64,000 nucleotides of DNA from assembly GCF_000315625.1 (NCBI RefSeq), contig NW_005434625.1:79726-143725 (forward strand), given 5' to 3'. The position numbers were made by a program, and so were the translations under genes. The notes under the pieces are model-generated. The model did no database searches and was not told the origin of the DNA. It saw only the letters and a program-made list of their open reading frames with translations. Each line of letters begins with the position of its first letter. The first letter of the stretch is position 1. Origin of the DNA: Guillardia theta CCMP2712. Its lineage: Eukaryota; Protista; Cryptophyta. This document shows positions 31,173 through 37,500 of the stretch, one piece after another.

Positions 31173-32337
31173 GCCTCACGGGATCGTTTCATCCCATCAC
31201 AAGCAGTTGCCTCTCGCACACACGCGATATCATCCATTAACTTTGAATCTTGCCGTCTTTGATGAAGAAAGATTGCTACTGCCTTGTGGGATTTGCATTT
31301 TTAAAAGAAATCAATTGACTACAACCCTCCCACTCATTTCTTGTCTCCATTCATCAGCATGAATGTCTTTTGAACTGTCTTCGCTCTATTCACACACGCT
31401 TGACAGTCCCTCATCTCCTCCTCATGAATTGATCAAATCACCCTGTACATTCTTGTCCTTGTACTTGGTCCATTCTTGCCTTTTCAAGTTCGCCTCCACC
31501 TCCGCCAACCTCATGCACTTGAACTTGAAGATTCTCTCTTCCAGCGACTCTCCCTCCTTCCTTCATACCTGCGCTCCTCTCCTCTACTCTCATCTCATCT
31601 CATCTCATATTCTCTCCTCTCCTCTCCTCTCCTCTCCTCTCCTCTCCTCTCCTCTCCTCTTCGTCTCCCTCTCGCTCCTCCTCTTCTCCCTTCCGTCTCC
31701 CTCCCCTTTGCACTTCACACGCCTAATGGATCCTCCCCGACGATCTACTTGTCTACCGTTTCAGCTTATTAATTACACTCCTTCTTTAATAAAACCTTTA
31801 GTTGCTTATTAGAAAATATATCTGCTAATCAGCTCCATGTTTCCTATAACGAGATCTTAACTTATGTCTTATTTAAGGAAACTTTATTTTATTTGAATGA
31901 TGATTCTTTATTAACACATTATTCTACTAATAACCTGTCAACGGCATTTTCAAAGTTCCCACCAACACCCACCCTCATTTAGACGAGGACCCTACCCTTT
32001 GAACATGAACCCACCCCAATGAGTCGATTGGGAGCCCACCCTGCAGTATTGATACCCCTCCCCCACCCCTTGCCTTTCCTACACCCCCTCTTCCTCATTT
32101 CAGACCCCGTAAAATATTAGTGCCCGGGCCACAGCGGCCCGGCCGGGGCGGCGGGAGGGCGGCGGCCTGGTCGGGATTGAATGACTCAGATGCCATGATC
32201 TGCCAGTCGAAGACTCGGGGGTGGCACTGCCAGGTTGAGCAGATACTTTACAGAAAAACAATGAGTCCAACTAATTGTACAAATACTACGGTAACTAGCG
32301 ACAGCAGAAGAATCTTTCACAATGAAGTTGAGCTCAG

Positions 32338-32532
32338 TCAAGACAATGAATCCAGCAGTTGCTTCACATTCACTCGCTCGCGAGGAAGCTCGATCGGCTG
32401 CTTGTCCCTCGTCTGCAGCCTCTCGTCATGCTATCACCCTTCACGTGGCCCTTCACGACTCACCTTCCAGATCTCTCCCAAGAAAGCCTGTCGGGGGACG
32501 CAGTGCGCGCCGAGGTCCAGCTGCAGCACAAT

Positions 32533-32564
<32 letters not shown>

Positions 32565-34270
32565 GCATGCTTGACCTTGTACTTGAGCGTCATCCCCAGA
32601 TCCCAGAATGCTGCCCCCGCTACAAGGGCGACGTGAGGAAGAGGCGCTGTCTTTACAACTCTGCTCACCTTGCTGCAGCAACTTGGCTGTCCCTATGCAT
32701 TGAACGCTCCCTGCAGACATGTACACTGATCATTGTATGCAACGGGACCGAGCGGGGAGAAGAGATCTTCACCAGCAGACTTGACCGTGTAGAAACCAGA
32801 GAGGCTGCAATGATTCAGTCACTGCAGTAGAAGCAGCAGGAGAGGAATCACCTGGTGTAACATCCGCCAACAGAGTATCCCATTTCTCCTGCCACCATGG
32901 TCCCGTTTTCCCACAGCTGCACCAACAAACGATGAATTTCCTCTCCCCAAGAACAGCGTCCAACCTCGAAAGAATGTATCCTTACACCGTTGATTCCTCC
33001 CCGTTCGAGAATCTCCTGCGCGCAGCAAGCTTCAACAACGCAACCCTTCCTCGACTAGTGTAAGCTACCTTGAGGACGCTGATGAAGGGAGGGTAGAGCC
33101 AGTTCTCGCCATGCTGTCTTAAACATCCCTGCCAGGAATCTCAGCCAATGTCTCAACAACAACTAGACGGACCTGCACCACCTCGTCGAACGCCCTGTCA
33201 CACGTGATTTCGAATCGCGAGGATCTCTTACGGAGCTGCACAGAAGTGAACAAAGGCGAGCAGAGGGAAGGCAGACGATGGGCAACCTTCTTGCGCACGT
33301 GCAGGTCTTCGAACTTCAATATGCATCTGCAACAGGCAACAGATCAGCGGAGGAAAGCAAGCAAGGAGAGCGAAGGACCTTTGATGATGCATCTTGGGCA
33401 AAAGAACAAACTTGGCAGGTCCTTCCTTCGTCATCTGCAACATCGTCAGCCAATCAAGCTCCTATATGCAGGCTGAAGGCTCACCTCTGCCATGGGAAGG
33501 TAGCCCTCGTACATGAGAGCAGCGAGAAAGTCCGCATCGAAACAGGTAGACCAGCAGTACTTCCCCTGCATCCTCAACCTTCAATGGTTGTAACTTGTTT
33601 CTGGCCTCTACCCCACCTTGTACTCCAGCGCCAGGTTTGCTGCCACATGATGAATATCTGGACCTGACAGATGGCATATGAGTCGACAAGATGATTGCAA
33701 TGTTCGAGTCGAGGAACCTGGCATCAGGAGAGGAAAGTTGGTCAACCAGGGATTACTTCTCAACACCAGCTTGTGGAGATCGGATAGTCGCTCATCAAAT
33801 AGAATCTCGGATGGCAGCACGACCGAGTCCTCTACTGCATCTCAAGTGTCACGAGCAGCCATGTTTGGCATCAAGGTTCCACCAATGTCTTCTTCACTAT
33901 GAAAAATTTCGCTAAGAGCTGCAATCGTCAAAGCTGTTTGATCCACTTGGCCGGAGTGAGCTGGGAGATACAAATGTCAAAATCAACCGGAACAAACTCA
34001 CTAGAATATGCTGCTCACCGTTCAAAAGCTGAGTGATTGTCGACTCGGGAAAAGTCGGAAACATTTGCCGAAGTTCGTTCACTCCTCTACACAGCAGTGG
34101 TCAGCCAAGATACAGTTGGACAACGAATATTCCACCGTTGTTGCACATTCGCATCAGCCTGAGTCACGCCTACAGTACAGGTAAGTCCTGCCTGCAACTG
34201 AACACACGAAACTAAACCGGGCTGCAAGACATTGTGCTGTTTGTTCCAAACATCGCTGAATCGAACCTTC
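32338..34270 (-). CDS. Leucyl/phenylalanyl-tRNA--protein transferase (Aat-like) with an upstream CUE domain; 5' exons may extend to ~35100
   Basis: ALMYEGYLPMAE, LLPKMHHQR/CILKFEDLHVRKK, FEITCDRAFDEVVQ, HGENWLYP, GAAVG, FWDLGMTLKYK/LDLGA. CUE: ELRQMFPTFPESTITQLLN/AHSGQVDQTALTI. Confidence 0.85.
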
Positions 34271-35489
34271 AAAACAGTCAAATACAGCAAAACTGAGCGG
34301 TCCATGCAAATGCGAACGAAGCTGCGACAAGACAAGTCAAGATTTCTCACCAAAGGGGTCGCGCTTGGTAGCGATGTAGGCACAAGATGCGCTAGATACA
34401 CAAGGAACAAGAGTTGCGACAGAGACGACCAGCTTGCGACCTCCATGTCCACCATCTCAGTCCGGAGGCCCTACAAACGCCCTCCCACAGAACTTGCCGA
34501 CAGAAATCGATTTCTTGTCTCAAAAACAGGGATTACTGTCGATCTGATGTTAGATTTCCGTCATACGCAGGTTCAAGGGTCACCTAGTTGAATCGCGGAA
34601 TGATGACTTAGGATATCGACCAAATATCATTGCAGATAAATAAAACAGGGTTGCTTTATCTCACTCTCATAGAATCAGTTCCTGAAAGTCAAACATTAAC
34701 TCGATAACTTCATCAAGCTTGTTGCAATAGACAGGCATTGTGAAGATCACAAAGTACGTCCTTTTTGCATTCGATCTATCCTCGCTCAAGAAGGGTAATC
34801 CAGTGGATCAATCTCGCAGCTGCTGATGAGCCTCACTCGGGCATCTCCTCACACCCGTGCCTTCCAACAACTACACATTCACGCTGTCCCTCCATTTCAT
34901 CTGTCGCACAAGAAAAAGAACGGAGCTGCAGCTTTTGAGGGGGTGACAGCCTCCTGGGACTATTCCACTAGGAGCACATGACACTTGTGAATCTCCTTTT
35001 GCATACCTTCACCCCAATTATTCTTTCTTGCAATTCTTCTACTTCTTTCCTCGCCGTCACCTTCCCCACTCCACCTGCTTTCTTCAATTGATTTGTCTGA
35101 CTTCATCAATTTCCTTGTTTGTTCCTACTAAAAGATTTTCTCGTCGTTCTTTTCTCAACGTAATTTCCACGTGATAGTTCCCTTCTTATTGCATATTTCA
35201 GTCTCATATTCCCTTCCTGAATCCTCCTCATCACGACCTTTCTCTCCAATTTCTTTTCTTCTTCCTGATTCATTCTCACGATCTCCGTCGCCACTACCAC
35301 CACATCCTCCGCAACCACCATCATGACCATCGCTAATGCCGTAACTTCACCTGCACCTGCAACTGATCAACTTGAATGACATCAACAACATGTTCAACAT
35401 CATCATTTTCATTTTCTATTTCTGATCTTCCTTTTCACCCTCTTTCGTGCTCTTTGTAATCATCCATCTGCATCCTGTCCTTGCCGCTG

Positions 35490-36735
35490 GATATTGCAGC
35501 ATTGTCGAACACCTACCCACCCTTGTCTCTCCACCACTCCTCAATTATCCCACCACCCGCTTGATTTGGGGTGCAGCACAGTCCCAGTCATGCTAGAAAG
35601 TACCGGTAGTGAAGATACCCCACCCCTCAAGAATTTCATTTCGTTTGGACCACCCACGTCGCAGCTAACCCAGGGAATTACCACCCTACCCCAATATTCC
35701 AAGAAAACAGTACCCTACCCTACAACAAAACTTAGCACCCACCTTGTCTTCGCCCGCATCTCGTCATACCGTTGACGAACCCTACCTCCCAATTTCACAA
35801 CAGAATACCCCACCATTTAGCTGTCTTAACCCCCCAGGCGGATTCTTCAGAGTACCACCACCCATCATGGGTACCCCATTTCTGCCCCACCCCGTACCCC
35901 CCAAATGTATCCCAACCATCTCCTGGGGAGCTTGCATTTAATAAAACTATTAAATAAAAACAATTATAATTCTTCGTCTTCAAGGGTGGGGTAGCTGAAA
36001 TGATCTCGACCGATGGGTGGGTAGAATAGAAGGAGGGGTGGGGAAACTTTTCAGTAAAACCACGTGGTACAGCTACCAATGAGACATTGTAGCAGGGGTG
36101 GCACAAGAAAAGGGGGTATCCTCCTACGAAAGGGGGCTCCGGTACAATACAACAGTACCAAGTCGTTTTGTCATCACCCAATGGTAGAAATAGCCTTTAT
36201 AAATTTGTATTTATAAAACTATTTATTTTAGTCTCGGCGGTGAGGAAGGCCCCGGGCCCGCCACCGGACGGTGATCGGATCGGACTCAGCACCGTGACTG
36301 CGGCACCTGACGTCACTGAGTGACTCGTTCCCGGACGCTCAATTGGCCAGGGCCCAGCGGCTCGCAAGTTCGGCGTCCGGCGACAAGGATAAAGTGGACT
36401 TGATGTCACTGAGTCAGGTCCGGGACAACCGTGATCATCGGATGTACGGTCACTGAGTCACAGTCAGGTTTACACAAATCATCGGCGAATCACTCAGGCT
36501 GAGCAGTTTGGTAGTTTAATCTGATTGCAAGAAGAATTTTGACTCTGCAGGCGCGGCGCGCTTGTTCTATGAAAACTCAGTGTGTATTGCGCCGCCGGCA
36601 GGCGGGAGTCAGTTTCAGTCTGACAACGGACCGGGTCGCCGACTCGTGATCCGACTCGAAGTTGGTGACAGTGCGGGCCTCGGCGAACTTCGGAACTTAG
36701 AAGTTTTGGCCCGGACGCCGGAACTTCACTGAGTC
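35490..36735. promoter_or_regulatory. Intergenic module: ACCCC/GGGGT-rich block (35490-36190) plus GC-rich motif mosaic (36230-36735)
   Basis: The same two-block composition recurs in several other intergenic gaps (see findings). Function is inferred only. Confidence 0.4.
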
Positions 36736-36739
36736 ACTG

Positions 36740-37500
36740 AGTTTGAACGGAAAAAGAGAAGTAGAGAACGAGTTTTACTAGCACACTCCCACACCACTGC
36801 CTCTGCCTCACCCTCTCTAGAACAATTGACCGTCCTCGTTCTGACCTTGTACGATATAGTCGCGGGGAAGGAGTTTGAAATCTTGCCGTGAGAGTTTGAA
36901 AGCTACCAGAAGAACAACAGCAGAACATCTCCGCAACCGCTTCGTAACATTTCGCACCCACTCGCAAGATTGTTGAGCTTGAAGCAACAAGTACTTCACT
37001 GTTAAAGTTAAGAGAAAGCAAGCAAGCGCTTACACAAAGATCAATGTCGATGCAGAGCGTCGTTAAAGTCGCACACCATCTTGCGCAAAGCAGGCGCTCG
37101 TAACTCAGAAGATGGGATCCAAGAATCTTGAGTAGGATCATCAAAGCTCTCCCAGCGAACAAGATATTCTGTACGATTGCCTGAGCCACGACGACGCAAA
37201 ATCTTTTTCACTTCGTAGAAGTCACCATCTGCCGTGACGATGGGAGCAGGAGGCTGGGAGCGATCATCCAAGGTAGGATCACGAAAGTAGTAAGGACGCA
37301 GCTTTGAAACATTGTACACTGCATCCTTGCGATGCCGAAAGCTCGGAAGAAAAGCCTGACAAATGTACTGCACTGTCAGACTGCTTTTTCAGTATCCGCA
37401 AAGGTCCAATAAATTTCATACGAAGCTTCCGATCGCCTGAAGGAGATTTTGGAGATGCTTGATGAGTTGCTGAAGCAGTTCGTTTAGACAGGAGCATTTC
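36740..37500 (-). mobile_element. Ty3/Gypsy chromovirus 3' remnant (integrase C-terminal GPF/Y region + chromodomain + PPT + partial 3' LTR)
   Basis: RKLRMKFIGPLRILKK is frameshifted relative to VYNVSKLRPY..FYEVKKILRRRGSGNRTEYLVRWESFDDPTQDSWIP. A purine-rich GAGTGGGTGCGAAA is followed by TGTTAC at 36949. Confidence 0.85.

What the first reader, a model, noticed from the sequence alone, without database searches (positions are those of the whole stretch)
32338..34270. Ubiquitin-binding CUE domain fused to a bacterial-type Leu/Phe-tRNA-protein transferase: candidate new N-degron branch
Seen: exons at 34086-34020 and 33960-33883 splice in phase (AAC G|gtgag..cccag|CT CAC) to give GVNELRQMFPTFPESTITQLLNAHSGQVDQTALTIAAL, with the MFP motif of CUE domains. 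Further phase-consistent introns join this to the Aat-like catalytic domain. Known: L/F transferases add N-terminal degrons for ClpS in bacteria; a Plasmodium homolog transfers Arg; CUE domains bind ubiquitin. Inference: an aminoacyl transferase recruited to ubiquitinated substrates, coupling a prokaryote-type N-end enzyme to the ubiquitin system. More upstream exons (VVVGRHG near 34870) may add another module, weakly FHA-like.
Basis: partly seen in the sequence, partly recalled or inferred. Interest (0 to 1): 0.8.

Follow-up and report, generated by a model that had tools for sequence, protein, structure and literature searches.

The report
Organelle-targeted CUE-fused arginyl-transferase in cryptophytes
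This is a real, expressed gene of the alga Guillardia theta for an enzyme that probably tags proteins with arginine for destruction; it carries a ubiquitin-binding-type domain and a previously missed targeting signal that may send it into the leftover cytoplasm of the alga's captured red-algal cell.

Summary
Fusion confirmed. RNA contigs from three studies splice 19 introns into one transcript with one 387-aa frame (34455-32338). The CUE exon passes Pfam's cut-off alone, and the domain folds as a CUE bundle. The gene is G. theta GUITHDRAFT_110985; its Hanusia ortholog has the same domains, and both are already auto-labelled 'CUE domain-containing'.

Corrections: (1) The enzyme is not a bacterial Leu/Phe type. 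It belongs to the Aat-fold subfamily common in protists, and its pocket charges are swapped (M144->E, E156->L, W59->K), which fits Arg transfer to Asp/Glu. (2) The FHA-like piece is non-coding leader. (3) The CUE di-leucine is Ile-Ala, so ubiquitin binding may be weak.

New here: a signal-peptide-like N-terminus, missed by the JGI model, in all six complete members of this paralog clade, with no Phe at +1. A second G. theta paralog lacks it. The likeliest destination is the periplastid compartment, which has ubiquitin and a proteasome. CUE is not general in the clade; a separate group of marine proteins carries a probably independent CUE fusion. Activity, location and binding are inferred. No earlier scan note covers this.

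The parts
34456..35510 (-).
   Evidence: RNA contigs of three studies end at 35489-35510; frames and ATG count; single-copy in the genome. Contigs cannot fix a start site, so a shorter main leader is possible
34360..34455 (-). Start codon and signal-peptide-like stretch (aa 1 to about 32; hydrophobic core aa about 14-25)
   Evidence: In-frame stop just upstream; hydropathy; same stretch and upstream stop in the Hanusia transcript; absent from the JGI model, which starts inside intron 34350-34267
34136..34359 (-). Low-confidence spacer, aa about 33-62, over three small exons (to 34351, 34266-34218, 34169-34136); transit-peptide-like position, no conserved Phe
   Evidence: Exons from record coordinates; pLDDT under 50 in the Hanusia model
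33905..34086 (-). CUE domain, aa about 63-104, on two exons (34086-34019, 33960-33883); MFP at aa 71-73, di-leucine position reads Ile-Ala
   Evidence: Pfam CUE over cut-off; three-helix model with pLDDT about 90; nearest solved relatives CUEDC1 and Tollip CUE; motif register
33835..33904 (-). Acidic linker between CUE and core (end of exon 33960-33883, then an intron)
   Evidence: Translation; low pLDDT at aa 111-130 of the ortholog
32338..33834 (-). Aat-fold aminoacyl-tRNA-protein transferase of the ATEL1-like subfamily, 14 exons; key residues K207, E294, L306, D336, G338
   Evidence: Ortholog P0003: Pfam Leu_Phe_trans E 1e-25, Foldseek to E. coli L/F-transferase E 4e-15, alignment to E. coli, conservation in 91 homologs; introns
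32228..32337 (-). 3' untranslated region and poly(A) site at about 32235-32228
   Evidence: Poly(A) loose ends in raw reads and in one contig

Best explanation
G. theta has two ATEL1-like transferases. This one is the organelle copy. SHOWN: one spliced 387-aa frame of hydrophobic leader, CUE domain, acidic linker and Aat-fold core; a clade of orthologs whose complete N-termini all carry a hydrophobic leader; a leaderless second paralog. INFERRED: (1) the leader is a bipartite signal without Phe at +1 and takes the protein through the ER into the periplastid compartment (PPC), the remnant red-algal cytosol, which has charged tRNA, ubiquitin, a Rad6/Ubc2-type E2 and a proteasome; (2) the core moves Arg from Arg-tRNA onto N-terminal Asp/Glu, making an Arg/N-degron; (3) after removal of the leader the CUE sits at the N-terminus and binds ubiquitin weakly, raising the enzyme's concentration near ubiquitinated proteins or ubiquitin machinery. 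The CUE is an accessory, since other orthologs lack it. Rough odds per step: Arg transfer 0.75, PPC location 0.55, ubiquitin binding 0.55; the confidence given is for location plus activity.
For: Splicing and frame. Two loci only. Clade of 10 rows at 100/99 support, leaderless cryptophyte clade of 7 rows at 100/100. Hydrophobic N-terminus (10-residue mean 1.86-2.71) in 6 of 6 complete clade members against 8 of 63 others at 1.84 or more; L001 has one as well. Paralog start has an upstream stop and no hydrophobic stretch. Two ClpS genes of this genome show the stroma pattern with Phe after the signal, for contrast. Rule that a non-aromatic +1 marks PPC proteins: PMC5443833. PPC proteasome and Hrd1: PMC6559170; nucleomorph Ubc2-type E2: PMC12412216. 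Pocket: E. coli M144/E156/Q188 roles from PMC4964394; here Glu or Asp in 90 of 91 at the M144 position, Leu/Phe/Met/Tyr at E156, Lys in 88 of 91 at W59. The Plasmodium sequelog transfers Arg: PMC6135404. A bacterial homolog is fused to N-terminal glutamine amidase, which makes N-terminal Glu.
Against: No signal-peptide predictor was available; cleavage sites and +1 residues were read by eye. The G. theta n-region is acidic and the core holds a His; the spacer is not rich in Ser/Thr or basic residues. Clade members are kin, so 6 of 6 are not independent, and most are unlabelled environmental sequences. No PPC-targeted UBR-box ligase was found: the two UBR genes whose starts could be read have no leader. 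The P. falciparum protein itself was not aligned. Bacterial homologs share the same pocket although bacteria read Leu/Phe degrons. Di-leucine is Ile-Ala, and CUE domains can bind other ligands (PMC6688830).
Confidence: 0.45

Rival explanations
1. The hydrophobic stretch is an uncleaved membrane anchor that holds CUE and core on the cytosolic face of the host ER, like yeast Cue1 (anchor plus CUE; from memory); the enzyme arginylates ERAD or ER-escaped substrates with host Arg-tRNA.
For: Cytosol supplies tRNA, ubiquitin and three UBR-box proteins; the spacer after the hydrophobic stretch is a poor transit peptide.
Against: The hydrophobic core is only about 12-14 residues with polar breaks, short for a membrane span; three orthologs share a cleavage-site-like Gly-Gly/Cys-Gly then (Ile/Leu)-Gln pattern right after it.
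Confidence: 0.2
2. The enzyme goes to the plastid stroma and feeds the ClpS/ClpCP pathway (adding Leu/Phe, or Arg as a first step); the CUE then has no ubiquitin to bind and is a docking module or relic.
For: The genome has ClpS genes with stroma-type leaders; bacterial members of the subfamily exist in ClpS-using phyla; G. theta has a Phe at aa 38, near the possible cleavage site.
Against: That Phe is Val in Hanusia, and no ortholog shows Phe directly after the hydrophobic stretch; the acidic residue at the donor pocket argues against Leu/Phe; MFP is kept in both genera.
Confidence: 0.12
3. The CUE is a lineage-specific add-on in Guillardia and Hanusia that no longer binds ubiquitin (or binds another partner), and the enzyme works as in CUE-less orthologs.
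For: Di-leucine is Ile-Ala and a second helix-3 contact position is Ala (that contact is from memory of the Cue2 structure); other members of the clade have no CUE.
Against: The CUE is nearly identical between the two genera while the leader has drifted; a second group of transferases also carries an N-terminal CUE, which suggests repeated selection for the link.
Confidence: 0.15
4. One reading: a cytosolic, prokaryote-type Leu/Phe-transferase recruited by CUE to ubiquitinated substrates, with an FHA-like module upstream.
For: Pfam family name and Aat fold; real CUE.
Against: Pocket residues swapped; leader present; FHA-like piece non-coding in G. theta and without counterpart in the Hanusia transcript.
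Confidence: 0.06

Closest known systems
Plasmodium falciparum ATEL1 (Aat sequelog with Arg-transferase activity; Graciet et al. 2006, as cited in PMC6135404) and the protist 'Leu/Phe-tRNA protein transferase, putative' cluster
   Same: Same subfamily by sequence and model: Atlas cluster of 590 members, 86% eukaryotic, commonest Apicomplexa; 36% identity over 280 aa to the apicomplexan Cardiosporidium homolog; shared PK[LM]H, AGE and WDLGM motifs.
   Different: Carries a CUE domain and a signal-like leader, and exists beside a leaderless paralog. The Plasmodium protein itself was not compared here.
E. coli Aat (L/F-transferase, PDB 2dpt, 2z3k)
   Same: Fold (Foldseek E 4e-15, TM 0.78 by target); W111 and D186 kept.
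   Different: About 21% identity; M144->E, F153->Y, E156->L, I185->W, Q188->G, W59->K; no CUE, no leader.
CUE domains of CUEDC1, Tollip, Vps9, SMARCAD1
   Same: Three-helix bundle, MFP motif, conserved Gly before helix 3.
   Different: Di-leucine reads Ile-Ala; fused to an enzyme of N-terminal tagging, a pairing not found in the searched literature.
Eukaryotic ATE1 arginyl-transferases
   Same: Inferred reaction; distant structural match (E 6e-6).
   Different: No sequence family match (Pfam ATE_N/ATE_C not hit).
Nucleus-encoded PPC proteins of cryptophytes (e.g. nucleomorph histone H2A, PMC5443833)
   Same: One paralog with a signal-like extension lacking Phe at +1, beside a paralog without extension.
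   Different: Location not shown here; leader judged by hydropathy and conservation only.

Membership tests
CUE domain (PF02845) | Score over the Pfam cut-off | tested here: met
   21.7 bits for one exon; 25.9 for the Hanusia ortholog; cut-off 21.1
CUE domain (PF02845) | Three-helix bundle | tested here: met
   AlphaFold2 on the ortholog, pLDDT about 90; top Foldseek rows are CUE domains, rmsd 0.6-0.9, though E-values are weak at this size
CUE domain (PF02845) | MFP motif after helix 1 | tested here: met
   aa 71-73
CUE domain (PF02845) | Di-leucine (LL, iL or ih) in helix 3 | tested here: inconclusive
   Ile-Ala in both genera; first position fits, second is a small residue (definition PMC6688830)
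CUE domain (PF02845) | Binds ubiquitin | not testable with these tools
   Needs a binding assay
Leu_Phe_trans superfamily (PF03588) | Pfam match and Aat fold | tested here: met
   Ortholog: 90.7 bits, cut-off 22.7; Foldseek E 4e-15. Window exons alone gave only E 0.1
Bacterial Aat L/F-transferase (Leu/Phe onto Arg/Lys) | Hydrophobic donor pocket M144, F153, L170, F173, I185 | tested here: not met
   E, Y, C, T, W at these positions (PMC4964394)
Bacterial Aat L/F-transferase (Leu/Phe onto Arg/Lys) | E156 and Q188 that anchor a basic acceptor residue | tested here: not met
   Leu and Gly
ATEL1-like subfamily | Closer to protist/spirochaete-type homologs than to E. coli Aat, with shared motifs | tested here: met
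   354 representatives at E under 1e-30 against E 2e-7 for E. coli Aat; motifs near-invariant
ATEL1-like subfamily | Transfers Arg to N-terminal Asp/Glu | not testable with these tools
   Inferred from pocket residues only
PPC-targeted proteins | Cleavable signal peptide | tested here: inconclusive
   Conserved hydrophobic stretch; no predictor available
PPC-targeted proteins | Transit-peptide-like part with non-aromatic +1 residue | tested here: inconclusive
   No conserved Phe in any ortholog, but cleavage sites were read by eye and the spacer is weakly transit-like
PPC-targeted proteins | Experimental location in the PPC | not testable with these tools
   Needs GFP or immuno-EM
FHA domain | Coding exons in frame with the protein | tested here: not met
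   Motif lies in the unspliced leader, closed by stops

The most novel reading that the evidence does not exclude
Cryptophytes keep a separate, host-supplied Arg/N-degron pathway inside the periplastid compartment, and in Guillardia and Hanusia its transferase uses a CUE domain to dock on ubiquitinated proteins there (SELMA import intermediates or proteasome substrates); CUE fusion to this enzyme arose at least twice in protists.
Probability: 0.25. Interest if true: 0.75.

Novelty: new variant of a known kind. Interest (0 to 1): 0.55.

Why it matters
How proteins are marked for turnover in the periplastid compartment is largely unknown, and how ubiquitin for import is kept apart from ubiquitin for degradation there is an open question. 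A nucleus-encoded N-terminal tagging enzyme with a PPC-type leader is a concrete, testable candidate. Apart from location, an arginyl-transferase with its own ubiquitin-binding-type domain reverses the usual order (tag first, ubiquitin second) and recurs in a second protist group. The domain pairing is already visible in automatic UniProt/Pfam labels, and the enzyme subfamily is known, which caps the novelty.

Tried and rejected
FHA-like upstream exon: rejected. Separate transcripts for CUE and core: rejected. JGI start codon (370-aa model): lies in an in-frame 84-nt intron that contigs of three studies splice out. One origin for all CUE fusions: not supported; the two CUE-bearing sets sit in different starred groups and a profile of the second group's CUE scores two unrelated G. 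theta CUEs higher (20.0, 18.2 bits) than this one (12.5-14.6), but an AU test did not reject joining them (p 0.11 and 0.34). Duplication of the two paralogs within cryptophytes: allowed, not shown (p 0.65). Hidden CUE in other clade members or upstream of P0008: none found. ATE1 in the genome: not found with PF04376/PF04377, but the same kind of search also missed both known transferase genes, so the blank says nothing. Taxonomy of the environmental homologs could not be fixed. Graciet 2006 and Stork 2012 were not held; they are cited through other papers or not at all. Bacterial genome scan with an exon query found nothing.

Full report
Source. The window is on contig C49 of an 87.1-Mb, 669-contig genome. 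Database records of this gene name it Guillardia theta CCMP2712 GUITHDRAFT_110985 (XP_005829919, UniRef L1J477, 'CUE domain-containing protein').

Observation. Contigs from three studies (RNA by guess, but spliced and one with a poly(A) end) and one raw-read RNA run were laid on 31900-36300. They show a minus-strand transcript from about 35510 to a poly(A) site at about 32235. Fifteen joints are listed directly; four more follow from the record coordinates. All 19 resolve to GT-AG introns of 44-84 nt, and the spliced length matches the longest contig exactly. One frame is open for 387 codons from ATG 34455 to the stop ending at 32338, with an in-frame stop just upstream. A deposited transcript-derived protein of the same length exists (P0017). 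The first alone passes the Pfam CUE cut-off. The FHA-like motif near 34870 lies in the unspliced first exon in a short closed frame, and the Hanusia transcript has stops upstream of its ATG and no similar leader.

Method note. Window searches were exon by exon, by reference; the joined frame was only translated inside a script to check phase. For full-length searches and folding I used the deposited Hanusia phi ortholog (P0003, 84% identical). The deposited G. theta record P0017 was used only in local alignments and trees. The large protein search was run once, because exon-sized queries cannot find full-length proteins in the word search and the claim rests on how the domain pairing is distributed.

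The CUE domain. The ortholog scores 25.9 bits on Pfam CUE. AlphaFold2 gives three helices at pLDDT about 90, separate from the core by a low-confidence acidic linker. A profile of six such domains finds CUEDC1 (E 6e-7), Tollip and Vps9 in the PDB, and Foldseek's top rows are CUE domains. MFP is intact, but the di-leucine position reads Ile-Ala. Both motifs are described as needed for ubiquitin binding, and SMARCAD1 CUE1 binds a non-ubiquitin partner (PMC6688830). So ubiquitin binding is likely but may be weak; it is not shown.

The enzyme. The core has the fold of E. coli L/F-transferase at about 21% identity, but it belongs to a different, large subfamily: 354 representatives at E under 1e-30, an Atlas cluster that is 86% eukaryotic and commonest in Apicomplexa, with spirochaete and deltaproteobacterial members. 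In E. coli the donor pocket is hydrophobic (M144, F153, L170, F173, I185), and E156 and Q188 hold the basic acceptor residue (PMC4964394). On the HMMER alignment these positions are E294, Tyr, Cys, Thr, Trp, L306 and G338, and W59 falls on K207. Across 91 homologs the M144 position is acidic in 90 and the W59 position is Lys in 88. An acid in the donor pocket and a base near the acceptor fit Arg transfer onto Asp/Glu, the activity measured for the Plasmodium sequelog (PMC6135404). One bacterial homolog is fused to N-terminal glutamine amidase, which produces N-terminal Glu. This is inference from sequence; the Plasmodium protein was not aligned, and the W59-to-Lys mapping extends the alignment four residues by eye.

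The missed leader. The corrected protein begins with a hydrophobic stretch that is also present in Hanusia. The JGI model lacks it because it starts at a Met inside an in-frame intron. The genome holds exactly two loci of this subfamily, 264 kb apart. The second, GUITHDRAFT_163996, has no hydrophobic N-terminus. In the tree the two fall in separate, fully supported groups: 10 rows with this gene, and 7 rows with the paralog and Hemiselmis. All six members of the first group with a complete N-terminus have a charge-free hydrophobic stretch, against 8 of 63 other homologs at a similar score; these six are kin, and four are unlabelled environmental sequences taken to be cryptophyte from the tree. 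None shows Phe right after the stretch, whereas two ClpS genes of the same genome do. In cryptophytes a signal peptide followed by a non-aromatic residue marks proteins for the periplastid compartment rather than the stroma (PMC5443833). The ER lumen and secretory route have no charged tRNA (established knowledge), so they are poor destinations for this enzyme. The PPC of G. theta has a 26S proteasome and Hrd1 (PMC6559170), and cryptophyte nucleomorphs encode a Ubc2-type E2, the class used by N-degron ligases (PMC12412216). Against this, the leader was judged without a predictor, the spacer is weakly transit-like, and no leader-bearing UBR ligase was found.

Distribution of the fusion. Within the leader-bearing group only Guillardia and Hanusia have a CUE. 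A second set of five proteins from environmental or unlabelled sequence data (P0125, P0130, P0254-P0256) has an N-terminal CUE, a linker (acidic in most) and the same core, and no leader; upstream stops were checked for two. Their CUEs score below the Pfam cut-off (E 8e-4 to 0.03) but align cleanly. The four with a full core group together (97/94, with two CUE-less rows inside) away from the cryptophyte group. Their CUE profile is no closer to this CUE than to unrelated G. theta CUEs. Independent fusion is the simpler reading; the AU test does not exclude a common origin. No paper in the held library joins CUE with this enzyme family.

Verdict. It is a new variant of a known enzyme subfamily: most likely an arginyl-transferase, most likely sent to the periplastid compartment, with an accessory CUE that probably binds ubiquitin weakly. 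Each of these three steps is inferred and each can be tested directly.

Noticed in passing
P0168; L028:991-2373 (bacterial assembly GCA_001276615.1): N-terminal glutamine amidase (NTAQ1 family, E 4e-47) fused to an ATEL1-like transferase in a bacterium: a two-step N-degron module (Gln to Glu, then tagging) in one chain.
   Followed up: partly
P0125, P0130, P0254, P0255, P0256 (L004, L005-L007): A second, leaderless family of CUE plus transferase proteins from unidentified eukaryote-like sources; their CUEs are below the Pfam cut-off and so unannotated.
   Followed up: partly
P0180, P0187, P0161: Other fusions of the same core: MYND-type zinc fingers at the N-terminus; TPR repeats plus a tubulin-tyrosine-ligase domain at the C-terminus.
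   Followed up: no
L033 (G000:C8:761381-761461, minus): A ClpS-like gene whose frame starts with a signal-like stretch not followed by Phe; a possible N-degron reader for the periplastid compartment. L031 also lacks an obvious Phe at +1.
   Followed up: no
G000:C49:about 376340-377650 (L025): Leaderless paralog GUITHDRAFT_163996 on the same contig, with a C-terminal extension shared by environmental orthologs and not matched by Pfam.
   Followed up: partly
window 34456-35510: About 1 kb of single-copy transcribed leader with 31 ATGs and a 74-codon purine-rich ORF (35330-35106); either strong upstream-ORF control or an overlapping transcript merged in assembly.
   Followed up: partly
window 32464-33172 and 34267-34350: Deposited transcript proteins show frequent intron retention in the 3' half (P0006, P0018-P0021); three introns (84, 51 and 48 nt) are in frame without stops.
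   Followed up: no
window 37041-37497, minus: Fragments resembling the integrase end and chromodomain of a Ty3/gypsy retrotransposon upstream of the gene (by eye).
   Followed up: no
P0068, P0101: Two homologs that fall inside the cryptophyte groups are deposited at NCBI under an archaeal MAG (Promethearchaeia); probably mis-binned eukaryotic contigs.
   Followed up: no
Atlas cluster, row 3: Spirochaete proteins that fuse Leu_Phe_trans with ATE_N and ATE_C domains (51 members).
   Followed up: no
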